Shown: piece by piece, positions 17,271-64,000 of the stretch
Layout of the letters: each line of letters begins with the position of its first letter
How positions within the stretch are numbered: the stretch's first letter is position 1
Assembly (NCBI GenBank): GCA_963924565.1
Contig: OZ004608.1
Coordinates: forward strand, 5,394,001 to 5,458,000
Length of the DNA stretch: 64,000 nt
Direction of reading: 5' to 3'
Source: Ascidiella aspersa
Taxonomy: Eukaryota
Translations under genes and position numbers: made by a program
The notes under the pieces: model-generated
What the model saw: only the letters and a program-made list of their open reading frames with translations
Databases searched by the model: none
Told to the model about the DNA's origin: nothing

Positions 17271-17855
17271 CTAAGTTTGCTGCCAAGAGTTTCTCCACCC
17301 TCCGGGGTTAACGCAACGGCTAACCCATCTCACCAAGCCAGGCCCAAAAGTTTTGGCCAAGTAGATGGCAGCTTCCTTCAAAGTAATTTCATTCGTCGAA
17401 GTAATTAGACCGTGAACACCTTCACCAGAAACATTATAATGCGTCACCGCGCTATGCGTCTCAATCTTCCAAGAGACATTTGATCCTACATATGTTACGT
17501 CACGACCGCAGAACTGTTCCATTCCCTGGCCCCGAAGAGTGAAGGCAATGCTCTTCGTCATTGTATCGCTGTAATCAGATCGGAATGCAACTTCTTTATT
17601 TTCCGTGTCGCGAGCTTCTGTGAAAATTCGGTTTACAGCCGATTCCGCGTCATTCCAACAAGACGGAATGGGTTGGCCGTCTGACACCCTCAGCAATCCA
17701 CAAGTTCCAGCCAACTGAGTACCACTGGCAGAAAACCTCACGTACCACATTTTTCCATCTAGCATCCCGCATTCCGAGTACAAAGCTTCGTTTCCGTTTT
17801 CGTACTGCGGTCGAATCCTCTCAACAGGAAAGGTGAAATGCCACACTTCCTGCAT
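17271..17855 (-). CDS. Orphan family type Q copy 1, 194 aa (MQEVWHFTFPVE...WRNSWQQT)
   Basis: First in-frame ATG is at 17855; the ORF-track start at 17888 is TTG. The frame is conserved across diverged paralogs, with in-frame indels between types. Confidence 0.88.
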   Translation of the reverse strand: MQEVWHFTFPVERIRPQYENGNEALYSECGMLDGKMWYVRFSASGTQLAGTCGLLRVSDGQPIPSCWNDAESAVNRIFTEARDTENKEVAFRSDYSDTMTKSIAFTLRGQGMEQFCGRDVTYVGSNVSWKIETHSAVTHYNVSGEGVHGLITSTNEITLKEAAIYLAKTFGPGLVRWVSRCVNPGGWRNSWQQT

Positions 17856-18650
17856 TATTATCTTTATCGGAACAGCAGCAATCAACAAATGAAAGGTGTT
17901 TTTTTTTTTTTAACAATTGAAAAAATACCTGCCTGATTAGAATAGTAGAGCGAGTTAAAGGTAAACAAATGCAGCGACACATTTGAGTCAGCCATTTTAG
18001 CTTTTAGCAAACAGGTTATTTTCCAACCGCTAAAATATCCCTGCAATAAGAAATAGAAGATGCTATTCACCTGGACGCGAAAGTAGTTACAATCGATATA
18101 TAAATAGTCACGGGAGTAAGCGTAAAAAAGCGATACGGCCAAATAGCCTATAGGCACTTCCTAGGGCTATTTAACCGGCCAATAAAGTAATTAAATCAAT
18201 TTCGAAATAAGTCGTTGAAATTATTCAAAATTACCTAAATTAAATGTAATACTACCACTTCTCAAACCCAAACCCAACCATAATCGAAATCAATGAATAA
18301 TCACGCATCCGGTCATACAGCAGCCACTTCCTTACGAAATTTTCCTAAACGACAAAACAAACGTAGGAAACGCTTCTTTTTAATCGAAAGGTATAAAGCT
18401 AGATAAAGTTTTCGAGCACGAAACATTTTTTCTAAAATCATGAAAAGCACCATTAGTTTAAATACTTGAAAAACATTTGAAAATCGGTTCCATACGTTCC
18501 CTGTATAATCCCACCATTCGCCTGTGTGAAATAGCTCTTTTCAGCTTTTGCTTTTTTTCAGCTTTTTTGCGCCATATAGTGCAATCTTATCGTAGGTGCG
18601 TGTTGTTGACCTTACAAGTTTGCTTGACCTTAACGCGACGCCAACCCTAG

Positions 18651-18682
18651 CCAATCAGTGGCCTCTGAAAGAGGTCACGTGA
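18651..18682. promoter_or_regulatory. CCAAT box + GTCACGTGA E-box pair upstream of type Q/B genes (also 20634-20665, 45316-45347, 62239-62270; E-box only at ~60122-60130)
   Basis: AGCCAATCAG followed 18 nt after the CCAAT by GTCACGTGA, within a ~700 bp duplicated upstream block. Confidence 0.4.
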
Positions 18683-19794
18683 TTTTACTTGGCTTCACTT
18701 ATTTCAAAATCACCGTTTCTTTTATGCGCCAAATCGCACAAACTGAATTTACTGCTAGAAAAATATGTCGACAAATTACCAATTTATGCAAAAGTTCAGT
18801 GCTGCGGAGTTGCCTTTAAAATTTCCGTTTAAGGATTTTTTTGGAATATCGTCAGCTAAATGGCACTTAGCTGAAACTCCCAACTTAATTATATCGCTTG
18901 ATTTCTGGCATCAGCTGCAGCCCGATATTATAGTCCATACAGCTGGCTCAGCTAGGCTCGGCTCGCAAATTAAAGTATATTTAGTTTTTCCACATAAAAT
19001 GTTAAAATGTCAACTGTTAACAATGTTCATACTGTTCTGGCACCGTGTGAGTTTTGTATGATACAAAAATAACTAAACGAATACAACTGGCGTTACCGGG
19101 TGAAATAGAGTATTTGCGGTGACTTATAAAGGACTTCTAGCGTTGCCTCGGTGATATTAAATAAACATCGGGTTTCTTCTCTCCATAGAAAAGAAGGTAG
19201 TGGAACAAAAACACGCTACAAAGCTACACTAAACAACGAAGGCGTGCCCTGTCGAGCTGTTGAGAGTGTTGGCGAATAGAAATCAATCTGCCGTGACCAA
19301 AAAATGACTCTTCATCACTACCACTTCACCACTATTGCACACTATGCTGTAACATATAACCTATACACGATAGAGCAAAGACGAAGTGAGCTACAGAACA
19401 GGACAAAGAGATTGAGAAGCGCAATAAATCAAAACGCCACTTGGTTTAATGACTCTTTTGGTAAAGTGTCATTTCCACCGTTCGATGTCGCCCTTGATTA
19501 CAATTAATTAACCGCGATCAAATGGCTGAACATTAATCTGGGCATGGCTGAACATTAATCGGTATTTCAAAAGCAAATTTTGCAAACGTTTGTTCAATGT
19601 GAACTGTTAGGCTACTATTAAATTCGTCCTAAGTTAATAGGAATTGATTAACAAATCAAGCCCGGAATCTTTGCATTGGGTACGAAATAGGAAGTGAAAG
19701 AACTACAAACTTAAAAACTCGCGAAATATTGCATCGTTATTCATTTCATAGTGGCCTACTATTCCACGAGAAAATATTTGAGATTAAATAACTT

Positions 19795-20086
19795 CTATAT
19801 AACTTGTTTCTGTTTAATGTCGCCGACCCCTATGAGATTTTTCTTTATAGCTGATTCGGCGTCTCGCCATTCGGACGGAATGGCTTGTCCATCTCTCATC
19901 TTTATAAACTGGCAATTTCCGGCCAGAAGAGTACTGTCATTTTCGACTGGGGAAAAACTTAATGTACCACATCTCGTAGCAAGCCATTCCGTCTGTTTCA
20001 GAGTAAAAAATTTCGTTTCCGAATTCGGAATCAAATTCCCTTTCCTCAATGGAACAGGTAAAGTGCCACACATTTGTGTCAGCCAT
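19795..20086 (-). pseudogene. Orphan family type B copy 1 (N-terminal half only), frameshifted
   Basis: MADTNVWHFTCSIEE...WYIKF is followed by a one-base shift at ~19950-19958 (GGGGAAAAACTT vs GGGGCAAACTT in the other B copies) into SPVENDSTLLAGNCQF...KQKQVI*. It also lacks ~90 bp of the upstream leader. Confidence 0.8.
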
Positions 20087-21851: not shown

Positions 21852-24074
21852 CAACGTCAATGGAGAAAAGACCTAACCGCCAATGTAGACACCATGTTTC
21901 AATGGAGAGGAGTGGATGTACAAACAAAAGGCATCTGGATTTCCAGGAAACCACTTTGGATCACATTGGATGATGGCGTGAAGGTAAGCTTGATTAATTT
22001 ACAAGAAAATCCGATAAGCTTTGACTTGCGTTTCAAATAAAGTGCACCAACTTAACTTTTGCCACTCAAACTCTAATAATATACTTGTGAACAGCACATA
22101 GAAAGCCTTTAGGAATAACACAACAATAACTACTGGGCAACAACATCTAAATCAAAAAAATTATAATACTATAGTTGTCAGCCCAACGATATAATAAAGC
22201 CAAATACACAGTAATATCCACGACAGAATAAAATCTAAATTGTCTGAATATAAACCAGACCAGTCGGAACACGTCTTAAATTCATCGAAATAAGGCGTAA
22301 ATGTCTATAAATAACGCCTGGAACAGTTAGTTTGACCGGCCCGTTTAGTTTTTTTCGAATTTTTTGTCCCTGTTAATGGTGGAAAGTAATGGTAGAAGTT
22401 AGAACTTGGTTTAGTGTTGAAATTATTAGGGGAGTTAGTGATGTACTTAGGGGTGAGGGTTAGGTAAAAGGTTGTATAGGTTTGTTCTGAACATTTAGGT
22501 CTATTCCGACTGATTTAGGACTTATTCAGATAAGACGGTATAACGACTATGAAGATAATACCGGTAGCCCTATTTTAGTCTTATTCCGAACTTTGTTTTA
22601 TTGCGACAATCATGTTGTTCTTATATAGGTCTCATTGTTGGAGTCTCCTTTGCAGTGTTACCACAAGTAAGCCACGTGGGTTTAATGACAGACATTTAGG
22701 CTTGGTTTTAAAATGGAAGATTGGCACAAAGCTTTATTTTTGTTATTTCCAAACCTTTAAATTGCGTTCAAAACCTTGTTCAATTTTCCTGAAAAAGTAA
22801 AAAAATGTTCTCAGCACCTTAATCTTAGAAGCACTCACAGCATAGATATAATGGATAAAAAGCATGGCATAATGCGCCATAATACACAGTTCAATAGATT
22901 AAGGGTACATGTTTTGAAAATATACGTAAAAAGGTATACGTGTTTGCATCGTTCCAATTAAAATTACCATAAACATAGCAGCATAAACTTCGTTTTTTTT
23001 TTGTATACAGATTGCCTTGTTCCTCATGGATTCTGAAGGATTATTTAGCACAACCGCCTCCAGTGAGGAAACATCTTGTCTATTTGCCATAAGTACGCTT
23101 TTTAGCTCGTACCGTATACTTAATGTCGAGCGGCAATTAGCGTCATCCCAACTGCAGGCCTTTCAGGTATGCAGTAGATCAATACTCTTTTTGGAATAAA
23201 ATGATTAAACGTGTGTTGTTTTTCAGGATTTTTCAGACTACCAGCAAGTGTTTGGCGAACGAGAAGGTAAATCTGAGGTCAGGAATATAGGCTCATACGT
23301 TTTTTATAACATGTGTGAAGTGACTAACCTGTAAATCACTGTTAAAGAGGTCCATGCAGTTTTTTAAAGCTCCTCTGAGCTTACCTATTAAAACCTTGTT
23401 TCAAGTATAAGAGGAATCGCTTAAACCTTATGACCATATTTCTAGGGGGTGCTTAGGCAGAGGTAAAAGTAGAATTATCCCCAAAATATTTTCTAAGCGG
23501 AACGCATAAAACATTGCAAAGATAGCGCCACAAAGCTACGTCATTACACAAGCACCCTTAAGAAACGTGGGTTCACAGTTCGATTTCATATAGATTAATA
23601 TTATTTTTGTACATGGCGTTTTAAAAAACAAGCATATTTTTACCAGAATCGGCGAAAAGGCAAAAATTATTTTTCCGAATAGCCGTTCCGGACATTCCCG
23701 CTGCTTTTCACTACTGTGTTTAAGTTATCGAATAAAAAATTAGGCCTTTATTATTTAATCCTTGGGCTTTAGGTAAAATATTATACACAGATCCGTTGTT
23801 CAAAACAACGTGTTTATATTTTCATGTTGCTCTTCACAGCCCTTGCTCATACTACTTCGGGATTGGAATGGCCGTAAAACAGGTTACGGATTCAGGGCAG
23901 GAGGCGATTATATGAATACCAAGTTGGAGTCGAGCGATTTACCGATGGAGAACAGAGCAGCACCTGCGCAGTTCCTGGCAGCATTCAGCAGATACGCGTG
24001 TTACGCTTTACCCGAACCAGGCTCGGAAATTCGACACTCTGACGACCAGATTTCTTCGGATTATACAATGCAAG
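21852..24074 (+). CDS. Atlastin/GBP-family large GTPase, copy 1, partial (exons 21852-21983, 23011-23166, 23227-23277, 23840-24074); 3' part not present before the gap
   Basis: AG/GT-bounded, phase-compatible exons translate to FQWRGVDVQTKGIWISRKPLWITLDDGVK | IALFLMDSEGLF...LFAISTLFSSYRILN...LQAFQ | DFSDYQQVF... | PLLILLRDW...YGFRAGGDYM...CYALPEPG. These match atlastin-type G2, G3 (DxxG) and G4 (RD) regions. No P-loop exon was found. Confidence 0.88.
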
Positions 24075-25414
24075 GTGCGCCCTTTTTGGGATTTTAGCGA
24101 TTTATGTGTGCAGGATAGGCACTTATAGAAAATTGATAAAAAAATATGAGATAGATGGCATTCGCGCAGAAAATACAAACTTCTGCAATCTCAAAAACGT
24201 TTTTATTTCTTTTTAAGCAACACAAAACATACGACGAAGGTAGTGACACCATGTCAATTAAATTTAAAGCGTATATAATGAATTCCATTGATTTGACGGA
24301 TAACTTTTAGCATAACTTCTACAGCTGAACCACAAACCGTTATCAGAATAGTTTAACTACGGCGTTTATTAGATTTCATGCCCGCAAAAGGAACAACGAT
24401 AGTCCATAGCATGTATCAGGCTTTTAAGCGGTAAACTATAACCCGCACAAAACATACAGTATGTCATTAGCAGCGGATATTTTGGACGCGGTTTAAACAA
24501 CGGACAACAAAAAACAACCAAACAAAAACCCACTGATTGGGCTACGTCTGTGTATTCACCTATTCAATTAATTTTAACAAATGGACCTGGGAAACCTAGC
24601 ATGAGAATAAACTTTCGCGCTAACTCCCACGAACAAGCAGACCAGGCCTTTCAAAGGTAAAACGATACCCTATACAAGACTTGGATCACTTATAACCGCG
24701 TTCCTTAGCTTTGGATGCGGGGTCACATCAACCTTTGATTTTAAAGGTCGTGGTAATAAGCTGGATTCCTAGAATTCTTTAAAAAGTCGTTTATATGTAC
24801 CTTCTCTCGTTAAGTTGCCAGTCGATGTTATCGATTCAAAGGTAATTGCCACATTTAGGATGATGTATTAAATAAATTAACCGAACACGCAGTTACTTAC
24901 AGTGCAATTCAATGATTAGATTTAACAAATTAACCTTAAATTAGTATAAAAGCTCTTTTCAACAATGTTTTAATGTTTTACTTGAGCTCGGCGCCCCTAA
25001 CGCTTCACTAAGTTGGCTTTGACAATCACACAGCGCCTTTTTTAACATGAGTAATGGCCGTGTTTGTTGTTTTATCAAACTCGTACAAATCAGGGCTACG
25101 GGTTGAAAATAGTCTGAGTCAGACTCCCAAGTCCGATTAAAAAAAATGAAAGTTCAAACCCGGAGTATAAACATAGTTGAAAAATATTCCATCATATGCT
25201 TTTCCACCTTTGTAATCTTACTCTTTGCTGCAATATCATTTTCGAAATTTGTTGCTGCGCATAAACACGTCAGATTAGGTACTCGAATAGTCTTAGGTAA
25301 CGTTATTCGAGTCCCGAGTCCAACTCCAGCAAACTTAACGGACTTTGTCATGTCTGAAATCCAAATGTCGCTTTTCTGAGCGCTATATTAAATCGTGATT
25401 CCAAGTTGAGAAGA

Positions 25415-25614
25415 NNNNNNNNNNNNNNNNNNNNNNNNNNNNNNNNNNNNNNNNNNNNNNNNNNNNNNNNNNNNNNNNNNNNNNNNNNNNNNNNNNNNNN
25501 NNNNNNNNNNNNNNNNNNNNNNNNNNNNNNNNNNNNNNNNNNNNNNNNNNNNNNNNNNNNNNNNNNNNNNNNNNNNNNNNNNNNNNNNNNNNNNNNNNNN
25601 NNNNNNNNNNNNNN
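25415..25614. other. Assembly gap (200 N)
   Basis: Run of 200 n characters. Confidence 1.
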
Positions 25615-26920: not shown

Positions 26921-29900
26921 GTGGGCTCGGTGACCTTGGCTTTGCAGTGTCTTCTTGTGGAGCTAAATAGAAACAAATATTTCCCCTTGTAAAAAACATG
27001 TGAGGAAACACTGTAAATTTTCAATAAAAATATAAAAGTCATGAAATTTGCTAAAATTTGCAAACTTTCTATTTTCAGACATTTTGGAAATGACTTATGG
27101 TATCTTTAGTTTAAAAATGAATTTACAATAAATCGATAAAAACACACACGAAAAACAGAGAGTAACTAGATATAGGAGTAGATAGCTGTAGAGAACTAAA
27201 ACGATAACGTCCCACTTTTTTTTTTAAATCTGAATTAATCAGATTGAAACAAATTGATCAGAATTTTAAAATGTTTTATGTTGATTTCACAAAATTGCTT
27301 TACGAATCGAAATTTTCTGTTGATATGCCACCTTGTTGAAAGAAACTCTACATGTGGAAAACATTCATTTAGATCGCAAACCATTACCTAAAAGGTGAAA
27401 TAATTTCGGCACAGATGCCCGCCTAGTTTCACACGAGTACCGATACCAAAAGTGGAATATAAAATATTTCTGTTTAAAGTCTTTAAAAACCTAAAAAATT
27501 TCATTGAAAAAAATTCCCAAGTTTTCAGGGTATTTTTCTCGCAACGATGCGTGCAAATTAATCGCGGTCCAGCGAAAAGGGTCGCCATCGGTCTAATGCA
27601 AAAAAAAATCGGCGCTTAGCTTTCGCGGGATCTCAGGTATTCAGGCTGCGGACCAAACTCTCGGGTTTCAGACGAGTACCGATGCTACCATCTGGCATCG
27701 GGTTTCGGCTCTGATCCGATATTATCGCCTATCGGTCATCCCCAAACTTTTATTTTAGTTTTACCGATTTCTTCCGGTTCATCGGGAACGGGAGGAAGTG
27801 ACGCAGACATGAAGCTTACGGAGAACATTGAGAGGTTGGTCCGTTGGCCTGAAGCTTTTTGTACTCGCCTCAACAACCTGGACAGTTCTCGCTTCTCAAC
27901 CTCCAAATCAGTGCGCCGCCCGTTGCCCGAGTTCTCCAGCTTTTTTGCCACTGGAAGCAAAACATGTTTTCAAATTTACTTTGACTTGTGTTTCGGTTCA
28001 TTTAAGGGCCGTTGAAAGTAAAAAGTTTGTTTTCCAAATGTGTAACGTTAAACTGTTCGCTTTGAGTGGAAAATAATGCGAAAATGACTTATCGATTTTC
28101 ACAGATTTTAAAATTTTTTGACATTGAATACGGAAAAGTGTTATTTTATGTTCGTTGAATTTGACGAAATTTTATTATTAAACAAGTTGAATTGTACATG
28201 TGATACTCTAAAAATGAATTAAACCTTAAAATATTAATTTATTTTTAAATCGAATTTAATTAGTCGTAAGTGACCTAACTTGAAACTTCGAAAAATGACT
28301 TCGTGCGCACCGATTACATTGTGTAACAGACAAAACTATTTTGTTTGCTTCTGGGTTTGAAACAATTTCTCCGATCGCTTTTCAACTAAAAGCCTAAAAT
28401 TCACAACTTCGCTTTTATGGTTGAGGAATGAAGTACATAAAGTAGGATTTCTTTGAAATTCAAGATGTTGACTATCGAACAAAAAATATCATGACCAATG
28501 GTGGGTTATGAATAACACGCATAAGTTTAAAATTCACACGCTTTTCTTTTTGAAATTTCGCTTTTTGGATTGTGTAGTTAAGTACTTTAATTATGTGTTC
28601 TCTTGGAAATTCCAGTAAAGTGTCACCTCTCGATCGGACATTTCTTCTGACCAATGTAGGATTTATAAACACTACGCATAAGTTTAAAATTCACACAATT
28701 TTCTTTTTGAAATTTCGCTTTTATGGTTAAGAAGTAGTGTAAAGTAATTTACGAGATCCCTTCGGAATTCCTAAAGATGTTGAATCTCCAACAGAAATTT
28801 CTGCGGAACAATGTTTAGGTTTATACACAATAAGCGAGTACACCGAAAGCCATCGCAGACTCACCAAATCTGTCGATCAATGATACAAGCAAGGCAGGCT
28901 AGAAAAAATATCTAGCCTGCAGTGAGGTTCGAACTCACGATCTTCGGTCATACCGGGATCGTCGGTCCACCACCTAAGCAACACAGACTCAGAGAGAAGC
29001 GAGTCGAGAAATAACTATACATCAATGCTTGCTACTTCTTTTAGTACAAGCAACTTCATATTTAAATGGATCTGCAGTATCATATCATTCAATAAAAGAT
29101 CCACGCAAATATGTGTTCAACAAATGCTATCTCTTCTGAAGCTGCTTTTTGACCAACGATTACGGCTTCCGTATCATTAGTACACCGAAAGCCATCGCAG
29201 ACTCATCGAATATGTCGAGAAATTATAGTACAAGCAACTTCACAAAAAAAAGTTGTTGAACACATATATGTGTGTATCTTCCATTGAATGAGGATATAGT
29301 ACTAGTGACCAATGCTGGGTTTATAAATGGCACGCATTTACAATTTATCACCTTTGAGGGTGGTCGGTCTGGCTTTCGGGTCCTTGTTCCAGCACTTCTT
29401 CATTAACTCGGTCAGTAGGGTGAAGATCTTTCGGTCAGCCTCGTTGGTCAGGGCCGCCTTGACCTGCTTGACCTTGGCGGAGTCCGGTCGGGTTCCGGCT
29501 AGGATGAGTGTGCGAAGCACGTCTTTTCGGACGGTGGCGCCTTCGTAAACACGACCTCGGGTCACAAGCTCGTACAGAACCATGGCAAGGCTTGGGAAGG
29601 AAAGTTTGGAGTTAAGTGGCTTAAACCGGGGTTATGTCGAGTCGGTTGGAAACAGGGCTGCACAGTCGGTTAAAAAACAACCTAAAAAATCTGACTTCGG
29701 CCAAAAGAATGAACCCAAGTTCGACTCCAGCTAAAAAATTCAACCCAAGTCAAACTCCGGTGAAAAAAAGAACCAAAGTCCGACTTCGGCAAAAAAAGAA
29801 CCCAAATCCGTCTCCGGTCAAAAAAGATGAACCCCAAACCGACTCCAGGCAAAATAATGAACCCGAGTCCGAGTCCCTAGTCCCTAGTTCGACACTGGTC

Positions 29901-32900
29901 AATGTGAGTCCCGTGTCCAATTCCAACTCTACAGCCTGTATTTAACCCGTTTACGCAACTAAAGTAAGGTGGATATTCATTCAGCAATCACTCAAAGGTG
30001 TGCCATATATTTTGATGGTTGGCAAATATTCTGCCAATACCTATCCGTCTTTACGATTTACAGTTTTCGGTCTTATCAGTTTAAAAAATGTTGTTGCACA
30101 TGTGCACGTCGGACAGCATATACACATTGCAGACAATCTTAGCCAATACTTGAACATTTAGACCTTCAAAGATCTTTTGTGTCCATAACCTACATTAACA
30201 ATATATTATATTCAGTAAATAATTCACTATAGGTATTGATATGGACATGTCTATACCTAACCGAGTGTTGCTCATCCAACAGCATTATGTAATCACTCGA
30301 CGTTTCGACGTCCTATACAGAACGTCTTCATTAGGATACTGACATAGATTCCTTATAATGATATGCCAGTATCCTGATGAAGACTTTCTGAATAGGACGT
30401 CGAAACGTCGATTCATTATATATACTGCTGGATGAGCAACACTTGGTTATATATTATGCCTGGCAGCAATAGCTTATTTCATGTCTGTACATTTTACCCA
30501 CCACAGTCTTCAACCAACCGACATACCTGTACATGTCAGCAAGTCGACTAATCTCTTTGCCTTCCAGTACCTCTGGTGCAGCGTAGCGGGCAGTGTGCTG
30601 ACCAGTGGGCGCGATGTCCAGTGAGCTTGAGTCGCACTGGGACGCCCTGACGATGTTGACCGCCCCGAAGTCGGCCAACTTGACGTTCAAGTGTCGGTCG
30701 AGGAGGATGTTTTCGGGCTTGATGTCGCCGTGGAAGAAGAACTTATTGTCCGAAAAGTTGTGAAGGTAGTAAAGAGCCGAGTTGACTTGACCGAACAGGT
30801 CCTGCCTAAAATTGTGCGATGTTTTGATTTATTTAATGAAACATGCACACAAATATGTGTGTTACTAACTGAGATTTAGCGCTTCTGAAGCTGCTCTGTG
30901 ACCAACGATTACAGCTACTGCGTTTATTTATTGTTTGATTAATGCATCCAGAAGTAGATTTTTTAATCTGTTGCTTAAATAACAATAACAATATAAAGCA
31001 AAAAACACTTTTTCGACTGTAAAAAAAGTAATTTCGTAAATGATATGAACAAACGGCCTGCCCAAGAACTTTGGTATCAGAGTTATAAAGTCCCAACCAA
31101 TTTGCAATAAATAAAATCATTTGCAATAAATAAAATTCATTTTTTCAAGTTATTGTGTAACGCGAAATTTGGTCCGGGGCCAAAACTGATCCGGTCGGAT
31201 CAATTTTGGCGTTGGAACAGCCGCTAAAACAGGTCCGGCTAGGCCAAAACTGGTCCGGCCTAATCCTAACCCTAGCCAGACCTGTTTTAGCGGCTATTCC
31301 AACGCCAACATCGATCCGACCGGACCAGTTTTGGCGCTTGATTACGACCAAAATCGATCCGGCCGGACCGATTTTGGCCGGACCAATTTTGGCGTTACAA
31401 TTTCCATAATAAGTCATTTCGATTCAAGTCCTTGGAAACAAAACTAAATGTTAAACTACTAAAATTAGCAAATTCACTCCAATCCTAGCAATTAATCGCA
31501 TAGAAAACAGATAGATCAAGGGAAACAAAAGCAGAGTTGTACAATTAAAGTAAATTATGCACTATTTACCAAAAATGTGTTCGATTAAAACACTAAGAAT
31601 AAAGTAAGTCATTTTCGCAAATGAGTTAAGTCCAAGTCCAGCAATTTGGCCAAACGAATAAATCAAGCCAAGTCATTATGCCCGAAAAGACAAGTCAACT
31701 AATTGCAAGACATTGACTTAGGCGCACTCAAGCCAAGTCATAGTCATTACAACCACTTTTTTATAACTGTAAGCCTACCTTTGGTACACTCTGTATATCA
31801 GATGCTAATTTCCAAACACGTGTCTTACCTGAGTTCCCAGCTCAATTCGTGCTGTGAGCTGATGAGTCCGTCCAGGCTTCCACACTCGACGTATTCCAAC
31901 ACAATGGCCACTTTGTTGCCGTCCCAGTTGGAGAAGCCGTGGATTTTGACGATGTTCGGGTGCTCCATGCGAGCCAGTACCTCCGCCTCTCGTTTCACAC
32001 TGCAAGGAGATGCGGTTTTGTGACGCCAAATTTTCTGACGAGCCATTTCTTGGACTCAAAAGTATGGTTCACAAATTGAAGTGCCGTTTTTAATGCTTTA
32101 GGGTGCTCAGTTGTGTTTGAGTATCTTTAATATGATTTTTGCTCGTTGTTAATCCCCTTGATACAGCTCTTTTTTGCACAGTTAAAGTGCAATAAACTAA
32201 ATGACAATTTCCTAATATATGTAGAGAATTGAATGGGTTGTTCCAGTCCCGTTTATAGTGACATTAACTGTGGACCAGTGGTTCTTAACCGAAGGGGGGC
32301 AACAAATTTTTAGGGGGTGCGAGCTGCACTTTAATATCTAACATTTTTAAATGACTTTATTGGTTACATATTGTGTTAAATCTGCTTTCATGTTGTCCTA
32401 TGCTTTACATCAAAATTACACATGTGTAGGCTATATACGTAACTGAAGAAAAAAAAAGCGAAATAATTTTCGACGTGCTATACAGAACGTCTTTATCAAG
32501 ATACTGACGTTTCGGTGGATGCTGTAAGCCATACATACAATGTTGGTAACCACTGAACCATATCTAAATAGGTATGTACCAGTAGAGGAATTTGTGCACA
32601 TTAGTCAGGTACCTGACCTAACCCGCAATGTCACATTTTTTTTATAACATATACTTTTTATGATTATCTATAGTGGTATGGAGGGATGCTTTTAAGCAGC
32701 GGGAAAGAGCGAGGTTTGCAAGTAACTTGAAGAGCTTTGCAGGTAATTTAAAGCCCATGAAAGGCACTTTAGCACCTGTAAACTTCAAATATTGTCAACT
32801 CGGTCCAGTATTTCAACATAGATGTCATCTTACCGAGTCTGAGTATTTTGGGCGGACTTGTTAAATAGCTACTGTGTGTCCAGTTAGTATTAAAGCGCTG

Positions 32901-47416: not shown

Positions 47417-50400
47417 CCCTTGCTCATACTACTTCGGGATTGGAACGGCTGTAAAACAGGTTACGGATTTAGGGCAGGAGGCGAATATATGAAGACCAAG
47501 TTGGAGTCGAGCGATTTACCGATGGAGAACAGAGCCGCAACTGCGCAGTTCCTGGCAGCTTTCAGCAGATACGCGTGTTACGCTTTGCCCGAACCAGGCT
47601 CGGAAATTCGACACTCTGACGACCAGATTTCTTCGGATTATACAATACAAGGTGCGCCTTTTGGGATTTTAGCGATTTATGTGTGCAGGATAGGCACTTA
47701 TAGAAAATTGATAAAAAAATATGAGATAGATGGCATTCGCGCACAAAATACAAACTTCTGCAATCTCAAAAACCTTTTTATTTCTTTTTAAGCAACACAA
47801 AACATACGACGAAGGTAGTGACACCATGTCAATTAAATTTAAAGCGTATATAATGAATTCCATTGATTTGACGGATAACTTTTAGCATAACTTCTATAGC
47901 TGAACCACAAACCGTTATCAGAATAGTTTAACTACGACATTTATTAGATTTCATGCCCACAAAAGGAACAACGATAGTCCATAGTAAGTATCAGGCTTTT
48001 AAGCGGTAAACTATAACCCGCAAAAAACATACAGTATGTCATTAGCAGCGGAAATTTCGGAAGCGCTTTAAACAACGGACCACAAAAAACAACCAAGCAA
48101 AACAACCTGGGTGTGCTACGTCTTGTATTCACCTTTTCAACTAATTTTAACAAATGGAACTAGGAAACCTAACATGAGAATAAACTTTCCCGCTATCTCC
48201 AACGAACAAGCAGACCAGGCTTTTCAACGGTAAAACGATATCCTATAGAAGACTTGAATCACTTATAACCGCTTTCCTTAGCTTTGGATGCGGGGTCACA
48301 TCAACCTTGGATTTTAAAGGTCGTGGTAATAAGCCGGATTCCTAAACTTCTTCAAAAAGTCGTTTATATGTACCTTCTCTCGTTAAGTTGCCAGTCGATG
48401 TTATCGATTCAAAGGTAATTGCCACATTAAGGATGATGTATTAAATAAATTAACCGAACACGAAGTTACTTGCAGTGCAATTCAATGATTAGATTTAACA
48501 AATTAACCTTAAATTAGTATAAAAGCTCTTTTCAACAATGTTTTAATGTTTTACTTGAGCTCGGCGCCCCTAACGCTTCACTAAGTTGGCTTTGATACAG
48601 CGCCTTTTTTAACGTGAGTAATGACCGTGTTTGTTTGTTTTATCAAACTCGTACAAATCAGGGCTACGGGTTGAAAATAGTCTGAGTCAGACTCCCAAGT
48701 CCGATTAAAAAAAATGAAAGTTCAAACCCGGAGTATAAACATAGTTGAAAAATATTCCATCATATGCTTTTCCACCTTTGCAATCTTACTCTTTGCTGCA
48801 ATATCATTTTCGAAATTTGTTGCTGCGCATAAACACGTCAGTTTAGGTACTCGAATAGTCTTAGGTAACGTTATTCGAGTCACGGGTCCAACTCCAGCAA
48901 ACTTAACGGACTTTGTCATGTATGAAATCCAAATGTCGCTTTTCTGAGCGCTATATTAAATCGTGATTCCAAGTTGAGAAGACGAGCTTGTGCCTTTCAC
49001 AAAGTTGCTAGCGAATTAAGCTTAACAAGTATATTTATGTTATGAAATTTTATCGTGCCAATAGTTAACAAAAATAATTGCGTCGGCATTGATTACTAAG
49101 AAATACGAGTTCTTATTCACAATTTCAGGACTCAGCATGGGAATCCTGGAATTCGGGGAGTTATGGCCGCCTCTCCCACGAATAAACAGTCATTGTCTCT
49201 TTACAAATGTCAAACACAACACCCCCGCTTAACGTGGGTTGAAAACTTTCCTCGGTCGTTCGAAGGACACAATGATGTACATAATGCAACCGTGGTCAAC
49301 TAACAGGCGTTCCTCGCCTTTGTGATACACACCTGACAACAACGATAGCTTGGTTTGGATTACATTAGATTGACAAACAACATTGGGTTTAGAGGTCGCT
49401 TTGGTGGGAAAATGCCACAGGGCTAATTCATATATATATCCCCTTACAGGCCTTTTTTTATTTCTTGGTTGGTTTTTATTAGAGTTTCAACGGAAACGGT
49501 TAAACTATAGCCAAAGATCAGAATTAACAGAACTCCAAAATAGAGCTGAAGACTATACCCTTAATGTGCACCATATATTAACACACACCGCAACATTAAA
49601 CGGTTTTAAATCTAAGGAAACACGATCAAGTAAATCATTCACAAATTATAGACATCAAATGACGACAAACATCTTAGAAATACAGTTAATTTACTTTGGC
49701 TAATGTTTAGATGTCGGAGAGAAATTTCTCGAAAAAGTAGAAGAACTTGCTGAAACACTTTCACGTGAAATAACTCCGAAGAAATGCGGTTGGAATGTGT
49801 TGAAGGGAAAAGACCTCATTGGCAAATTTTTGCGCTAAACAACTGAAATCCCCTGATGCGAATGTGAAGAATAGCTTTTTGGAGATAAAGGTATGGCAAA
49901 ACAACATTAATCAAATTGTAAAAGTATAAAAGCTCCTCTTGGATAAACATTTGTTCTTTTTTTGTCATTAACCTGATGGAAACCTACCGGTCTAGGGAGT
50001 CGAAACGTAAGCAAAACAGAATACCAAAATTCAAAACTTGTTTAATGGAATAACAAACACGTATTTATGTGTGTTTTACTTTCAGTTTGGAACGAAGTTT
50101 AATTGTGTAAAAATCATTAACGGAGTAGTGGTCTCTAAATCAAACGTCACCAACCTTATTAATCCTGGTCATCATTTCTTGGGAACCGGAGTCATACCAA
50201 ATGTGCTGTATTTGACAACTCTCCTAAAACTACAAATTGCTTCGTTTTACTCTACATATTACTTCTAATTTGTTGTGTCACTCACGTACGTGAAGACACT
50301 GATTCAGGTGTTAAGTTGCGCTATTATTAAAACAGGATATGTTATGGCCTCATATGGTGCTTATAGGCCGTGGGCACTGTGTTGTTACCTCCGCCACAGC

Positions 50401-51809
50401 AATACACTCTAATATAAAACCTATTAACGTATAGCACAGTTATATTTTATTTTTACAGGGCAAACATGAGTATGAATTGGCACAGCTTTTTACCAAGTGC
50501 ATGAAAGAACTGAACACCACCCTAAAAGAGGTACGTTTGTTAAACATATTATGTGTGACCGTAAAACCTATTTTTGACTTGTTTGAAACATCATTTAGAG
50601 TCCGAACATCTTGACGAGAACACAAAGCACAAAATAAAAGGATTGTGCTCCAGGGAAGCCAAACGAAGGTTTAAAGACGCTTGTAATTCTACGAATCGCC
50701 ACGTACCTGAAAAAACAAGGTTATTTGACCAACTTGTGGAAAACCACATCCTTGAATTCTTCGACAATATGGAGGTGATTCTAGTTAGCAGATAATGAAC
50801 ACAAATGTTTCTTTGTTAGTTATTTTTTCTTTTTTAAGCAGAGTGCCAATCGTCATGGAGGAACAGATACAATTCACAGCTACACAGTCAGATACAACCC
50901 AAATATGCGAGCGGTGCGTTACAAGCTTTTAATGTAATATTTCCCAGACAATATTTGTATATTTGTCCACATTATAACAATAATGCATTTATATCCGAGA
51001 ATATATATTTTTTGGTTAAAAATAGTTAACTAAATAGCGTATATATGCTTATGTACCTTTGTGATAAAATAATCTTTTCTCCGATTTAAAACAAATTGTG
51101 CACATTTCACTATATATAGGGTCTTATATTATTTCTCATTCTCCCTTGATAAATATTGAGTATAGGCTATTATATTTGACGTGATTCAGACTGATAATGC
51201 CACGTGATTTGCCAAAAGATGTGACTAGCGTAATATATTACAGTTGATAAATAAACTACCAGTTAATATCCACTTGTGGTAAACTTGGCAAGCATTAAAA
51301 CTTAGGTAGCAGAAATTGGCCATATTAAGTTAATTTAAATATGTGACAAAAAAACGGTATTAATTAAAGAATTTTCCAAAGATAAAAATATTTCACTTCA
51401 GATCCTGGAAGAAAGGTTTGCCGGGAATCTCTTTGAAATTCACTCGGAGTACAAGCAAGAGATTCTTGGCGACTTTGCAGAAGCAGTCTACTGCAACTTA
51501 GACAGGGAAAACGGAAGGCAGCTGGAGCAAGTTATCGAGCAAAGCTACAAGCGAATATGGGGACCGCGCAACGCGATTCATTCTAGCGTCTACGCTCGTC
51601 CAGCCACAGAGAAGTCAGCCAACACTTCGGTTAGCGGTAGAGAAGTGAGCAGCGCCTACAGAGACTCGGCCCGCTACTTTCTTTTCGCACTGCTGGTGTC
51701 GCTTTTCTTTCTTCTCTTGCGCTCCGGCACAGCCTTGATTGAGGCGACGCTCTACGCCGCCAAGGCAACGTACAGGGCTGCTGCCAGGCGGGCTCGGCGT
51801 TGGTTTTAG
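47417..51809 (+). pseudogene. Atlastin/GBP-family GTPase copy 2: 3' exons (47417-47651, 49711-49890, 50459-50530, ~50599-50774, 50842-50913, 51402-51809); 5' exons deleted, frame defect
   Basis: PLLILLRDW... | DVGEKFLEKVEELAETLSREITPKK...(TAA at 49836; frame restored by removing one T from the run at 49827-49831)...NSFLEIK | GKHEYEL... | ...REAKRRFKDAC...FFDNME | SANRH... | ILEERF...YFLFALLVSLFFLLL...RRARRWF*. The junction at ~46947 deletes the equivalent of ~21428-23363. Confidence 0.8.
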
Positions 51810-54078: not shown

Positions 54079-54281
54079 GGGCGCTGGTCAAGAATCTTAA
54101 AAATACGAAAATTTTTTTGGTTAGTGTGGTTAGCGTTTGAGTTTAGATAGGTTAAGTAGTATTATTAAATAATGATATTTGACCAACCTTCACCCAAACA
54201 CTAACCGATGCCCTAACTCAAATATTGTGCGTTGCTTCAATAATTGTTTCAAAACTGTGGTAGGATTCTAGACCAGCGCCC
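54079..54281. mobile_element. MITE with TIR GGGCGCTGGTC.AGAATC and flanking direct repeat AAACTA
   Basis: GGGCGCTGGTCAAGAATC ... GATTCTAGACCAGCGCCC, with AAACTA on both sides. Confidence 0.8.
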
Positions 54282-56291: not shown

Positions 56292-56885
56292 CTACCAAGT
56301 ATACTTCCATCCACCGGGGTTGACGCAACGACTAACCCATCTCACCAAGCCAGGCCCGAAAGTTTTTGCCAAGTAAATGGCAGCTTCGTTCAAAGTAATT
56401 TTATTCGTTGAAGTAATTAAACCATGAACACCTTCACCAGAAACATCATATTGTTTCACCTTCACATGCGTCTCAACCTTCCAAGAGCCATTTGATTCCA
56501 CATAACCGCAGCACTGTTCCATTCCTTGGCCCCGAAGAGTGAAGGCGATATTCTTCATCATTATATCGCTGTATTCGGACACGAATTCGCTTTCACTTTT
56601 TTCAATCGATTCAGCTCCGGTGATAGTTCGCTTCACAGCCCATTTCGCGTCTTTCCAGTAAGAAGGAATGGCCTGGCTGTCTGAGACCTTCAGCAATCCA
56701 CAAGTTCCAGCCAGCTGATTATCATCATAATCGTCATTTTCGTCGTCGTTGTGAACCGGCCCAAACTCCACGTGCCACATTGTTCCGTCCACCATTCCCT
56801 TCTCCGAGTACAAAGCTTCGTTTCCGTTTTCGTACTGCGGTCGAATCCTCTCAACGGGAAAGGTGAAATGCCACACTTCCTCCAT
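56292..56885 (-). CDS. Orphan family type E copy 2, 197 aa
   Basis: ATG at 56885; paralog of 41371-41964 with a Q-like N-terminus. Confidence 0.88.
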   Translation of the reverse strand: MEEVWHFTFPVERIRPQYENGNEALYSEKGMVDGTMWHVEFGPVHNDDENDDYDDNQLAGTCGLLKVSDSQAIPSYWKDAKWAVKRTITGAESIEKSESEFVSEYSDIMMKNIAFTLRGQGMEQCCGYVESNGSWKVETHVKVKQYDVSGEGVHGLITSTNKITLNEAAIYLAKTFGPGLVRWVSRCVNPGGWKYTW

Positions 56886-59310: not shown

Positions 59311-59895
59311 CTAAGCTTGCTGCCAAGAGTTTCTCCACCCTCCTGGATTGACGCAACGGCTAACCCATCTCACCAAGCCAGGCCCAAAAGTTTTGGCCAA
59401 GTAGCTGGCAGCTTGGGTCAAACCAATTTTATTCGCCGAAGTAATTAGACCGTGAACACCTTCACCAGAAACATTATAATGCGTCACCGCGCTATGCGTC
59501 TCAATCTTCCAAGAGACATTTGATCCTACATATGTTTCGTCACGACCGCAGAACTGTTCCATTCCTGGGCCCCGAAGTGTGAAGGCAATGTTCTCCATCA
59601 TTGTATCGCTGTAATCAGAACGGAATGCAACTATTCTATTTTCCGTGTCGCGAGCTTCTGTGAAAATTCGGTTTACAGCCGATTCCGCGTCATTCCAACA
59701 AGACGGAATGGGTTGGCCGTCTGACACCTTCAGCAATTCACAAGTTCCAGCCAACTGAGTACCACTGGCAGAAAACCTCACGTACCACATTTTTCCATCT
59801 AGCATCCCGCATTCCGAGTACAACGCTTCGTTTCCGTTTACGTACTGCTGTCGAATCCTCTCAACAGGAAAGGTGAAAGGCCACACTTCCTGCAT
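59311..59895 (-). CDS. Orphan family type Q copy 3, 194 aa
   Basis: ATG at 59895, open frame. Confidence 0.88.
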   Translation of the reverse strand: MQEVWPFTFPVERIRQQYVNGNEALYSECGMLDGKMWYVRFSASGTQLAGTCELLKVSDGQPIPSCWNDAESAVNRIFTEARDTENRIVAFRSDYSDTMMENIAFTLRGPGMEQFCGRDETYVGSNVSWKIETHSAVTHYNVSGEGVHGLITSANKIGLTQAASYLAKTFGPGLVRWVSRCVNPGGWRNSWQQA

Positions 59896-61290: not shown

Positions 61291-61590
61291 TTAATGTCGC
61301 CGACCGACTTGTTGCTGTTTAATGTCGCCGACCCCTATGAGATTTTTCTTTATAGCCGATTCGGCGTCTCGCCATTCGGACGGAATGGCTTGTCCATCTC
61401 TCATCTTTATAAACTGGCAATTTCCGGCCAGAAGATTACTGTTATTTTCGACTGGGGCAAACTTAATGTACCACATCTCGTAGCAAGCCATTCCGTCTGT
61501 TTCAGAGTAAAAAATTTCGTTTCCGAATTCGGAATCAAATGCCCTTTCCTCAATGGAACAGGTAAAGTGCCACACATTTGTGTCAGCCAT
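61291..61590 (-). CDS. Orphan family type B copy 3, 99 aa N-terminal-half protein (or truncated pseudogene)
   Basis: ATG at 61590 (AAAATGG); same structure as 46506-46805. Confidence 0.55.
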   Translation of the reverse strand: MADTNVWHFTCSIEERAFDSEFGNEIFYSETDGMACYEMWYIKFAPVENNSNLLAGNCQFIKMRDGQAIPSEWRDAESAIKKNLIGVGDIKQQQVGRRH

Positions 61591-63349
61591 TTTAGCTTTT
61601 AGCAAACAGGTTATTTTCCAACCGCTAAAATATCCCTGCAATAAGAAAGAGAAGATGCTATTCACCTGGACGCGAAAGTAGTTACAATCGATATATAAAT
61701 AGTCACGGGAGCAAGCGTAAAAAAGCGATACGGCCAAATAGCCTATAGGCACTTCCTAGGGCTATTTACCCGGTCAATAAAGTAATTAAATCAATTTCGA
61801 AATAAGTCGTTGAAATTATTCAAAATTACAATGTAATACTACCACCTCTCAAACCCAAACCCTAAACCCAACCTTAATCGAAATCAATGAATAATCACGC
61901 ATCCGGTCATACAGCCACTTCCTTACGAAATTTTCCTAAACGACAAAACAAACGTAGGAAACGCTTCTTTTTAATCGAAAGGTATAAAGCTAGATAAAGT
62001 CTCCGAGCACGAAACATTTTTTCTAAAATCCCGAAAAGCACCATTAGTTTAAATACTTGAAAAACATTGGAAAATCGGTTCCATACGTTCCCTGTATAAT
62101 CCCACCATTCGCCTGTGTGAAATAGCTCTTTTCAGCTTTTGCTTTTTTTCAGCTTTTTTGCGCCGTAGTAAATCTTATCGTAGGTGCGTGTTGTTGACCT
62201 TACAAGTTTGCTTGACCTTAGCGCGACGCCAACCCTAGCCAATCAGCGGCCTCTGAAAGAGGTCACGTGATTTTACTTGGCTTCACTTATTTCAAAATCA
62301 CCGTTTCTTTTATGCGTCAAAATCGCACACAGCGAATTTACTGTTAGAAAGACATTTGGGCAAATTACCAAATTTTGCAAAACTTCAAAGTAACAGCAAT
62401 TTTTGCCATAGATTCTTTTTTTACGTATGCCTAAACATTACACTGCCTGACAGCGCATGCCTTTGCTCTAATGTTTTGCCCACTTCGTGTTTACTTTATC
62501 GTCGAAGGTTAATTTCTGACTGAGGTAGGAACACGTAGAACTGCTCGAGCATGACGGCGACCGTAGTCACGTGATAACAAACATTGGTAAAACTATAGTA
62601 TATTAAAACAGTTTTAATATACTTTAGTAAAACATTCTGCGTACCGCCTGAATAACCCTTGCGTGTCATTATAGCCAACTCAGCAGATTGGCCTTAAGCT
62701 GTGTAGTAGCATATCGCATTACACCATCTAAGTGTCCATCGGTGAGCTGACTTTTGTTTCTTGTTTCTTCACACTAAGTTATATAATTATGTGAATGCCA
62801 GCTACGAGTAATTGTTAGTTGTCGTAATTTTCCTTATTTTATTTTAAGTTTCCCTGCATGTGGATTTTTGACACATGATTTGTGATTTTAAAAAAGGAAC
62901 TATTTTTCTTTTATAGCCCCATATTAAATTGGTTTACACATTGTCATGTAACATCGCGGTTTTAATACCATGATAACGAAATTAGAACATTGTTCATCTG
63001 TTACAATTATTTGGAGACCACTAGGTATGTGTTAAACTCTGTAATACAAACCATTTATGACCAAATTATTATGAATATGAACATCCGCAACAGACTACTT
63101 CCACGTATTCCGGCAAAGTTGCACAAAATTGACCACACGTCATTGTATATACTCTATGTGCACCTTTTTATTAAATTTTAATTTGAAATTGTGAGTTGGG
63201 CATTTTGCTTAACTCTGGAACCTGGTTTAGAGTAATAGTTTGGTTATCATTAAATTGTCGTCACAATTTTTCCAAACAGACCGAATAGTTTCTGTTCTCC
63301 ACCTTTAAATTGTAGCGAAGTGACACAAATTATACTTTTGTTAAATTAG

Positions 63350-63481
63350 CAACGTCAATGGAGAAAAGACCTAACCGCCAATGTAGACACCATGTTTCAA
63401 TGGAGAGGAGTGGATGTACAAACAAAAGGCATCTGGATTTCCAGGAAACCACTTTGGATCACATTGGATGATGGCGTGAAG
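63350..63481 (+). CDS. Atlastin/GBP-family GTPase copy 3, G2 exon (gene continues beyond the window)
   Basis: Matches exon 21852-21983; flanks are colinear with 20130-22505. Confidence 0.85.
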
Positions 63482-64000
63482 GTAAGCTTGATTAATTTAC
63501 AAGAAAATCCGATAAGCTTTGACTTGCGTTTCAAATAAAGTGCACCAACTTAACTTTTGCCACTCAAACTCTAATAATATACTTGTGAACAGCACATAGA
63601 AAGCCTTTAGGAATAACACAACAATAACTACTGGGCAACAACATCTAAATCAAAAAAATTATAATACTATAGTAGTCAGCCCAACGATATAATAAAGCCA
63701 AATACACAGTAATATCCACGACAGAATAAAATCTAAATTGTCTGAATATAAACCAGACCAGTCGGAACACGTCTTTTCATCGAAATAAGGCGTAAATGTC
63801 TATAAATAACGCCTGGAACAGTTAGTTTGACCGGCCCGTTTAGTTTTTTTCGAATTTTTTGTCCCTGTTAATGGTGGAAAGTAATGGTAGAAGTTAGAAC
63901 TTGGTTTAGTGTTGAAATTATTAGGGGAGTTAGTGATGTACTTAGGGGTGAGGGTTAGGTAAAAGGTTGTATAGGTTTGTTCTGAACATTTAGGTCTATT

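What the first reader, a model, noticed from the sequence alone, without database searches (positions are those of the whole stretch)
17271..64000. Candidate innate-immune cassette: orphan genes head-to-head with a GBP/atlastin-like GTPase, next to a non-RD RIPK-like kinase
Seen: the order [full-length orphan(s), B-type half gene on minus; GTPase on plus] occurs three times (17271-24074, 41371-51809, 56292-64000), with a period of ~15 kb on the right contig. The kinase lies just before the first right-hand module. Established: GBP-family GTPases and RIP kinases act in animal cell-autonomous immunity and cell death. Inference: the three gene types form a co-amplified, polymorphic defence locus in which the variable orphan proteins could be sensors, adaptors or decoys. 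Co-duplication alone does not prove functional linkage.
Basis: partly seen in the sequence, partly recalled or inferred. Interest (0 to 1): 0.8.

Follow-up and report, generated by a model that had tools for sequence, protein, structure and literature searches.

The report
Sea-squirt orphan gene cluster, dead GTPases
The thrice-repeated block is real, but its GTPase copies are broken leftovers; the substance is an undescribed, fast-evolving, transcribed family of small sea-squirt proteins whose domain is fused to the same type of signalling kinase in another sea squirt.

Summary
The order [orphan(s), half gene on minus; GTPase on plus] occurs three times in the window and a fourth time just beyond it, through segmental duplication at 93-100% DNA identity.

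The GTPase copies are not working genes. All four lack the P-loop exon that the parent atlastin/GBP-like cluster 0.9 Mb away has, and three carry a further lesion of their own. No RNA read fell on the one copy examined. The gap at 25415-25614 cuts two different genes tail to tail, so sequence is missing there and continuity is not shown.

The "orphans" are real genes:
- There are 25 open copies of about 195 codons, 24 of them in one 205-kb cluster.
- dN/dS runs from 0.3 to 1.7.
- Sense-strand RNA reads come from at least three paralogs.
- They are not strict orphans: a profile search found 25 distant relatives. The two named ones are from ascidians.
- One relative (Phallusia) carries the domain at the C-terminus of a non-RD (HGD) RIPK/IRAK-like kinase of the same family as the window's kinase.

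This supports an orphan-kinase link at family level, not an orphan-GTPase link. An immune role is untested and the fold gives no function.

Earlier notes of this scan had already described the neighbouring kinase-Kelch gene and the parent GTPase cluster.

The parts
5946..6446 (-). Orphan-family copy A3a. Its N-terminal ~25 residues are replaced, so it is probably damaged (whole ORF 5943-6524).
   Evidence: 99% identical to A3b over 6122-6389
11811..12413 (-). Orphan-family copy A3b: open, 201 codons, divergent N-terminus.
   Evidence: RNA loose end of run X5 matches 12254 and 6389 exactly.
17274..17855 (-). Orphan-family copy A1 of the left module, 194 codons. This is the protein that was modelled.
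19795..20086 (-). B-type N-terminal half gene, left module: truncated after ~residue 96 and frameshifted.
   Evidence: The full-length B type exists at C2:5603815-5604375 (L032).
21852..24094 (+). Left GBP/atlastin-like GTPase fragment. ORF extents of exons: switch I 21852-22037, G3 22987-23196, RD 23777-24094. No P-loop exon. Homology to the parent gene begins at 21333.
   Evidence: G3 exon hits PF02263 at 28.6 bits, E 1e-6
25415..25614 (.). Assembly gap. It cuts the left GTPase copy and the kinase copy, each inside an intron, tail to tail.
29341..33904 (-). Kinase domain in four open exons (ORF extents 33671-33904, 31828-32055, 30457-30828, 29341-29631). G-loop, VAxK Lys, HGDIKPEN, DFG and APE are all present. 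The Kelch exons of its upstream paralog are not in the assembled window.
41374..41964 (-). Orphan-family copy A2 of the middle module, 197 codons, with an acidic loop insertion.
43936..44517 (-). Orphan-family copy A1 of the middle module, 194 codons.
   Evidence: RNA reads of run X5 lie partly on it.
46506..46805 (-). B-type N-terminal half gene, middle module: open for ~96 family residues, then 4 foreign codons and a stop.
   Evidence: breakpoint at 46520 against L032. No RNA reads.
47354..51806 (+). Middle GTPase fragment: RD exon 47354-47662 through the last exon 51339-51806, which has a hydrophobic C-terminal anchor. It lacks the P-loop, switch-I and G3 exons; the duplicated segment starts at 46967.
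   Evidence: No RNA reads over the part laid, to 49899.
56295..56885 (-). Orphan-family copy A2 of the right module.
59314..59895 (-). Orphan-family copy A1 of the right module.
61291..61590 (-). B-type N-terminal half gene, right module.
62416..64000 (+). Start of the right GTPase fragment (switch-I exon 63350-63535). It continues beyond the window, where ~1 kb holding most of the G3 and RD exons is deleted.

Best explanation
The window holds the left end of a ~205-kb tandem cluster (C2:5.400-5.604 Mb) of a fast-evolving gene family so far seen only in ascidians. Each gene is a single ~195-codon reading frame. The protein has no signal peptide and no membrane segment, and is predicted to fold into two alpha/beta sub-domains.

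The cluster grew by segmental duplication. At one point a 5'-truncated copy of an atlastin/GBP-like GTPase gene from a cluster 0.9 Mb away (exon 2 onwards, without the P-loop exon) landed beside a B-type family member. It was then copied four times together with its neighbours and has been decaying since. It is a passenger, not a partner.

The kinase beside the cluster looks intact and catalytically competent. It is a non-RD (HGD) kinase of the TKL group and belongs to a large expanded family. Its near-identical upstream twin ends in a Kelch propeller. In the ascidian Phallusia mammillata a kinase of the same family ends instead in a domain homologous to the orphan proteins.

The most likely working model, which is inferred and not shown, is that the orphan fold is a partner- or ligand-binding module of these kinases, and that the free, variable copies act on such kinases in trans as sensors, adaptors or decoys.

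Shown here: the gene family, its open frames, sense transcription, the duplication history, the GTPase lesions, the kinase motifs and the Phallusia domain fusion.

Inferred: a physical or functional link between the free orphans and the kinases, and any role in defence.
For: Family and cluster:
- 25 open full-length copies plus ~12 fragments: 24 of the full-length copies in C2:5.400-5.604 Mb and 1 on C4.
- The copies align with 24 invariant columns down to 30% identity.
- Frames stay open at dS above 1, with dN/dS 0.32-1.67.

Transcription:
- 23 reads of RNA run X5 lie on the orphan ORF only, with all first mates on the + strand. That fits minus-strand RNA if the library is of the usual stranded kind (not verified).
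- Their loose ends match three other paralogs exactly.

Relatives:
- A profile search of 1.84 billion representatives gave 25 hits, best E 9e-20.
- The named ones are from Phallusia and Clavelina, in two ascidian orders.
- Several relatives share one contig, so the family is clustered elsewhere too.

Fusion:
- P0018 has Pkinase at 32-302 and the orphan domain at 374-544. hhalign gives probability 96.6%, E 6e-10, over 161 columns.
- Its kinase has HGDIKPEN and is 42% identical to window exon K3.

GTPase passengers:
- The P-loop exon (GEARTGKS) is present in the parent copies L012 and L014. It was found nowhere in C2:5.39-5.61 Mb.
- Three copies carry their own further lesion, and the left copy is cut by the gap.
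- The parent is 92-95% identical and the fragments are 95-100% identical to each other.

Kinase:
- Four open exons, 98-100% identical to the upstream copy, whose downstream exons hit Kelch families.

Structure:
- Model pLDDT 81.5, pTM 0.81.
Against: - The kinase link is only at family level. About 80 paralogous kinase exons exist in this genome, and several are closer to the Phallusia kinase (44-49% identity) than the window's two copies are (40-41%). Adjacency of one kinase pair to the cluster could therefore be chance.
- The fusion rests on a single deposited protein model. A search with its C-terminal part found no second fused protein, and the model could join two neighbouring genes.
- Most orphans (5.53-5.60 Mb, and the C4 copy) have no kinase nearby.
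- In one unidentified eukaryote from JGI metagenomes, no kinase or GBP exon was found in the up to 10 kb of flank held on the fetched contigs.
- The GTPase fragments keep open exons with pN/pS of 0.17-0.68. This rests on only 3-12 changes of each kind, so residual function cannot be ruled out.
- RNA evidence comes from about 6% of one run of unknown tissue.
- The fold search gave nothing above background, so no mechanism can be read from the structure.
Confidence: 0.5

Rival explanations
1. One reading: orphans, GTPase and kinase form one functional, co-regulated innate-immune cassette in which all three gene types work together.
For: The order is repeated four times. GBP-type GTPases and TKL kinases act in cell-autonomous immunity in other animals (established knowledge). 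The remaining GTPase exons are mostly open, with pN/pS below 1 on few changes.
Against: No GTPase copy has a P-loop exon, and three have further independent lesions. There were no RNA reads on the middle copy. Most orphans lack GTPase and kinase neighbours, and the parent GTPase cluster has no orphans.
Confidence: 0.07
2. The orphans are a lineage-specific, fast-evolving family whose function has nothing to do with the kinase. On this reading the neighbourhood is accidental, and the Phallusia protein is a gene-model join or an isolated domain shuffle.
For: About 80 kinase paralogs make chance adjacency plausible, and the window's kinase is not the closest to the Phallusia one. Only one fused protein was found. 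Most family members, here and on the metagenome contigs, have no kinase nearby.
Against: In P0018 the domain follows the kinase in frame, from its first strand and without a start codon of its own. The kinase pair sits directly at the edge of the only large cluster, and was duplicated with it.
Confidence: 0.33
3. The C-terminal half of the orphan protein derives from a captured HUH-type replication-initiator (Rep / origin-binding) domain that has lost catalysis.
For: About 15 of the 50 best structural matches to residues 95-194 are Rep or origin-binding domains. The best is RepB at Z 7.7, rmsd 3.3, 91 residues aligned. A conserved FTL(R) strand and, in distant relatives, a YC motif recall Rep motifs I and III; this is my own reading of alignment A2 against memory.
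Against: Z 7.7 is the tool's stated background level for models without a match. No sequence match to any solved structure was found, and there was no Pfam hit. Foldseek against viral models gave nothing below E 0.01. The would-be HUH histidine varies (Y/R/F/H) across the family.
Confidence: 0.05
4. The orphan ORFs are not functional genes. They would be chance or decaying frames carried by a repeat.
For: There is no Pfam family and no word-search hit. Several copies are truncated or damaged (5943-6524, the B halves, L024). Some pairs have dN/dS of about 1 or more.
Against: 25 frames of ~195 codons stay open at dS up to 1.5 or more. Conserved columns extend to relatives in other ascidian orders. 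There are sense-strand RNA reads and a confident fold prediction.
Confidence: 0.05

Closest known systems
Atlastin / guanylate-binding protein (GBP) family of dynamin-like large GTPases (Pfam PF02263)
   Same: The left copy's G3 exon hits PF02263 above the cut-off. It has DxxG (MDSEG), an RD motif (LLRDW) and a hydrophobic C-terminal anchor, and it is 92-95% identical to intact-looking parent genes that carry GEARTGKS.
   Different: The window copies have no P-loop exon, and three of the four cluster copies have further deletions or a frameshift. They are gene fragments, not members in working order.
RIP kinases / IRAK-Pelle kinases (TKL group); non-RD kinases of innate immune signalling
   Same: The window's kinase has a complete catalytic core with HGD in place of HRD. 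For its Phallusia relative, the closest solved structures include RIPK2, IRAK4, TAK1, RIPK1 and IRAK1.
   Different: There is no RHIM, death domain or CARD. The upstream twin ends in Kelch repeats and the Phallusia relative ends in the orphan domain. A survey found no RIPK1 homolog (kinase + RHIM + death domain) in tunicates (PMC12119088). Plant receptor-like kinases score equally well.
Uncharacterised ascidian proteins: Phallusia mammillata CAB3265597.1 (C-terminal domain) and Clavelina lepadiformis CAK8687945.1
   Same: They are homologous over the whole ~190-residue domain, with the shared motifs NGN..LYS, VAFTLRG, V.GLL and W..YC. Most are standalone and clustered, as here.
   Different: They are only 24-30% identical to the window's proteins. 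The Phallusia one is fused to a kinase, whereas no fused copy was found in this genome.
Sensor or decoy domains that occur both free and fused to immune signalling proteins (for example integrated decoys of plant NLRs). This is a working analogy from general knowledge.
   Same: One domain occurs both as free, variable, tandemly amplified genes and as the terminal domain of a signalling kinase.
   Different: No ligand, partner, induction or pathogen link is known. The analogy was not tested.

Membership tests
GBP/atlastin large GTPases (PF02263) | G1 P-loop GxxxxGK[ST] exon | tested here: not met
   Present in the parent copies L012 and L014 (GEARTGKS). Absent from the window, L011 and L013, with no hit in C2:5.39-5.61 Mb. 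A motif scan found only chance GK[ST] strings.
GBP/atlastin large GTPases (PF02263) | G3 DxxG and family-level profile match | tested here: met
   Left copy 22987-23196: PF02263 at 28.6 bits (cut-off 21.1), E 1e-6; MDSEG. Missing in the middle copy, deleted in the right copy, frameshifted in L013.
GBP/atlastin large GTPases (PF02263) | G4 RD motif region | tested here: met
   LLILLRDW in the left and middle copies. It aligns to atlastin residues 201-267 and to other paralogs. There is no Pfam hit for this exon alone.
GBP/atlastin large GTPases (PF02263) | Complete, uninterrupted coding sequence | tested here: not met
   Every copy in the orphan cluster is 5'-truncated, and three carry a further lesion.
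RIP kinase family | Kinase domain closest to RIPKs rather than to other TKL kinases | tested here: inconclusive
   Exon K3 scores best with Snf1/AMPK (E 1.5e-11); RIPK3 scores 1e-8. For the Phallusia relative, RIPK2, IRAK4, TAK1, RIPK1 and plant RLKs tie at E ~1e-17 to 1e-18. Exons were searched singly; no joined model was used.
RIP kinase family | RHIM, death domain, CARD or ankyrin C-terminal module | tested here: not met
   No such Pfam hit on window ORFs downstream of the kinase. The upstream twin carries Kelch repeats, and the Phallusia relative carries the orphan domain. The 3' part of the window's copy is lost at the gap.
Non-RD kinases | Arg of the HRD catalytic-loop motif replaced while the catalytic Asp, Lys, DFG and APE are kept | tested here: met
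   HGDIKPEN, ADFG, AAPE, VVAKC and the LGCGGFASV G-loop, read directly from the exon translations. The Phallusia relative also has HGD.
New ascidian 'orphan' domain family (no name) | ~190-residue domain with the motifs NGN..(L)YS, (V/I)AFTLRG, V.GL(L/I) and W..(Y/R)C....W | tested here: met
   Alignments A1 and A2. Profile hits at E 9e-20 to 8.5e-4 over the full length.
HUH Rep endonuclease / origin-binding domain | Conserved HUH metal-binding motif and catalytic Tyr; detectable homology | tested here: not met
   The candidate His varies across the family. No sequence match to solved structures or to Pfam. Fold Z 7.7 is at background level. BFVD gave nothing significant.

The most novel reading that the evidence does not exclude
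The ~190-residue orphan fold is a previously undescribed recognition module of ascidian non-RD RIPK/IRAK-like kinases. It exists fused to the kinase (Phallusia) and as an amplified, rapidly diversifying set of free proteins (here). The free proteins would plug into, or compete for, the kinases. This would be a chordate counterpart of free and integrated sensor/decoy domains in a lineage that lacks canonical RIPK1.
Probability: 0.2. Interest if true: 0.75.

Novelty: new variant of a known kind. Interest (0 to 1): 0.48.

Why it matters
Tunicates are the closest living relatives of vertebrates, but they lack interferon-type defence and, by one survey, canonical RIPK1 (PMC12119088). This genome has very large expansions of atlastin/GBP-like GTPases and TKL kinases. 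An undescribed domain that occurs both free (25 copies, fast-evolving, transcribed) and fused to such a kinase gives a concrete, testable handle on what these expanded kinases sense or recruit.

The result also warns against reading function from repeated gene order. Here the most "immune-looking" partner, the GTPase, is a decaying fragment carried along by duplication.

Tried and rejected
- Pfam scans of the orphans, of other conserved ORFs in the repeat units, and of most GTPase exons gave no hits.
- The word-based protein search and the ESM Atlas found nothing for an orphan.
- Foldseek against the PDB and BFVD, and VIA-align against 48,161 chains, gave only background-level matches for the whole model and for the N-terminal half alone: N half Z up to 5.0, C half Z 7.7.
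- A profile of the family matched no solved structure.
- An internal duplication of the two halves was tested and rejected: hhalign probability 0.35%.
- A 5' intron joining the upstream 'MADSN' start to the main ORF of A1 copies was considered. The candidate splice sites do not keep the frame, so it was dropped.
- A search for a second kinase-orphan fusion found only the Phallusia protein itself.
With one protein it returned six eukaryotic contigs with no kinase or GBP exon beside the gene.
- Two literature searches found no description of the family or of the cluster.
- pN/pS on GTPase exons had too few changes to decide between decay and constraint.
- Spliced gene models (kinase, GTPase) were searched exon by exon only. 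The joined sequences were never made or searched.

Full report
**Setting.** The window is C2:5394001-5458000 of a 308.6-Mb assembly. It has 38% G+C and a CpG observed/expected ratio near 1. The nearest named relatives of its genes are from ascidians, and earlier notes of this scan also treat the genome as a sea squirt. All multi-exon genes were analysed exon by exon.

**Observation.** Self-comparison shows kilobase-long direct repeats at 81-99% identity.
- Seven ORFs of about 195-200 codons of one family lie on the minus strand: 5943-6524, 11808-12419, 17271-17888, 41371-41997, 43933-44643, 56292-56939 and 59311-59928.
- Three shorter 'B-type' ORFs lie at 19795-20086, 46506-46805 and 61291-61590.
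- On the plus strand, after each B half, come exons of a GBP/atlastin-like GTPase.
- The block therefore recurs three times in the window, the last two about 15 kb apart. A fourth block lies at C2:5.466-5.494 Mb.
- The repetition is segmental duplication, not chance.

**The gap.**
- The left flank of 25415-25614 corresponds to position 48982 of the middle GTPase copy, inside an intron.
- The right flank corresponds to an intron of the kinase-Kelch gene that lies just upstream of the window.
- In the intact paralogs, about 2.8 kb of GTPase and about 3.9 kb of Kelch-coding gene follow these points.
- No Kelch exon is present anywhere in the window.
- So two convergent genes are both cut at the gap. 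Sequence is missing there or the join is wrong, and nothing can be said about continuity. I did not try to fill it.

**The GTPase copies.** The genome holds a very large GBP/atlastin expansion: 125 exon-level PF02263 hits, none of them in the window at E <= 0.001. The window's subfamily occurs in two places. One is the orphan cluster (four copies). The other is a cluster at C2:6.30-6.40 Mb, up to 93% identical in protein and 92-95% in DNA for its nearest copy (L014).
- The parent copies have a P-loop exon (…GEARTGKSFLLN…, PF02263 positions 2-43). This exon has no counterpart anywhere in C2:5.39-5.61 Mb.
- Homology between the left copy and the parent starts at 21333, inside the parent's first intron after that exon.
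- Left copy: it has the switch-I (with a one-codon deletion), G3 (PF02263, 28.6 bits) and RD exons, then the gap.
- Middle copy: it begins at 46967 and so lacks the switch-I and G3 exons.
- Right copy: it has a ~1-kb deletion removing most of the G3 and RD exons.
- Fourth copy (L013): it has a frameshift in the G3 exon.
- The fragments are 95-100% identical to one another, closer than to the parent. This fits one capture of a truncated copy followed by amplification with the neighbours.
- pN/pS of the surviving exons is 0.17-0.68 on only 3-12 changes of each kind, which decides nothing.
- No RNA read lay on the middle copy over the part laid, to 49899, or on the B half, in about 6% of one RNA run.

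**The orphans.** The genome has 25 full-length open copies: 24 in C2:5.400-5.604 Mb and one of 31% identity on C4. It also has about a dozen fragments.
- The B halves are 3'-truncated copies of a full-length B-type gene that survives at C2:5603815-5604375. The left one is also frameshifted.
- The 21 aligned proteins share 24 invariant columns.
- Pairwise dN/dS is 0.32-1.67 with dS up to 1.86. The family is fast-evolving, but its frames are kept open.
- RNA run X5 gave 23 reads, all on the orphan ORF and all with the first mate on the + strand. That fits minus-strand RNA if the library is of the usual stranded kind (not verified).
- Most of those reads fit only partly. Their loose ends match other paralogs exactly: the A3 type at window 6389 and 12254, L019/L020, and the 3' flank of L017. 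So at least three family members are transcribed.
- Runs X1, X2 and X4 are genomic and cover the whole stretch. They carry two organism labels.

**Relatives.** Pfam, the word search and the Atlas found nothing. A profile of the family searched against 1.84 billion representatives found 25 proteins (E 9e-20 to 8.5e-4). Most are 170-225 residues long and match over their full length.
- The only named relatives are from Phallusia mammillata and Clavelina lepadiformis, which belong to different ascidian orders.
- Several relatives share a contig, so tandem clustering is general.
- The joint alignment shows common motifs.
- The family is therefore not species-specific, although it is undescribed.

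**The fusion.** The Phallusia protein (550 residues, named 'RIPK1-like' by its source) has a kinase domain at 32-302 and the orphan-family domain at 374-544. hhalign gives probability 96.6%, E 6e-10, over 161 columns.
- Its kinase has HGDIKPEN, like the window's kinase, and is 42% identical to exon K3.
- The link is at family level only. Other paralogs in this genome are closer to it (44-49% against 40-41%).
- No second fused protein was found.

**The kinase.** Four open exons give a complete catalytic core with HGD, DFG and APE. They are 98-100% identical to the upstream twin, whose following exons hit Kelch families.
- Solved-structure searches do not single out RIPKs.
- A published survey found no RIPK1 homolog (kinase + RHIM + death domain) in tunicates (PMC12119088).

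**Fold.** The AlphaFold2 model has pLDDT 81.5 and pTM 0.81, and shows two alpha/beta halves. The N-terminal half modelled alone has pLDDT 88.6.
- No search gave a match above background.
- The C-terminal half's best matches are Rep/origin-binding domains at Z 7.7. I rate that as a weak lead.
- The two halves are not detectably homologous to each other.

**Verdict.** The repeated order is real but is explained by duplication. The GTPase is a dead passenger. The orphans are a real, undescribed ascidian family. A functional tie to the HGD kinases is plausible because of the Phallusia fusion and the adjacency, but it is unproven, and an immune role is conjecture.

One tool (look-up of encoding contigs) was closed, so synteny in other ascidians could not be read.

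Noticed in passing
window 1-17000 and 35470-41000: A ~5.85-kb unit is repeated in tandem (three units on the left, one on the right) at 96-100% identity. Each unit ends in an orphan gene. The other ORFs in the unit (e.g. 2033-2386, 1683-1928) have no Pfam match.
   Followed up: partly
window 23411-23506 and 47000-47080 (+): A short intronic ORF reads …SRG(C/S)LGRGKSRII…. In the middle copy this fits GxxxxGKS. It lies after the G3 exon in the left copy and has no hydrophobic strand before it, so I took it for chance. It was not checked in the parent genes.
   Followed up: no
window 41374-41964 and 56295-56885 (residues ~44-56): A2-type orphans carry a 10-residue acidic insertion (VHNDDENDDYDDN) in the loop between predicted strands 3 and 4. 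Loop length varies between subtypes and between species.
   Followed up: partly
window 18765-19061, 45430-45729, 60213-60512 (+): A 98-99-codon ATG ORF (MSTNYQFMQK…) is kept open in all three modules between the A1 and B genes. It has no Pfam hit, and the conservation may only reflect the recent duplication.
   Followed up: partly
window 20918-23035 and 24032-25414 vs 62416-64000 + L011:1-1919: The left and right GTPase fragments are 99-100% identical, although the other module pairs differ by 3-6%. This points to very recent duplication, gene conversion or an assembly issue. They differ by the ~1-kb deletion.
   Followed up: partly
window 29634-29945: A Lys/Pro-rich low-complexity repeat (plus-strand reading NPSSTPAKKFNPSQTPVKK…) lies in the intron between kinase exons K3 and K4, upstream of K4.
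   Followed up: no
C2:5530697-5604560 (L018-L033): The second half of the orphan cluster is on the opposite strand. It holds about 16 full-length copies and many fragments in ~8-10-kb periods, without GTPase or kinase exons. The copies look mosaic: N- and C-terminal halves have different nearest relatives.
   Followed up: partly
C4:1322805-1323371 (L034): A single diverged family member (31% identity) lies alone on another chromosome-scale contig. It may mark the ancestral locus.
   Followed up: no
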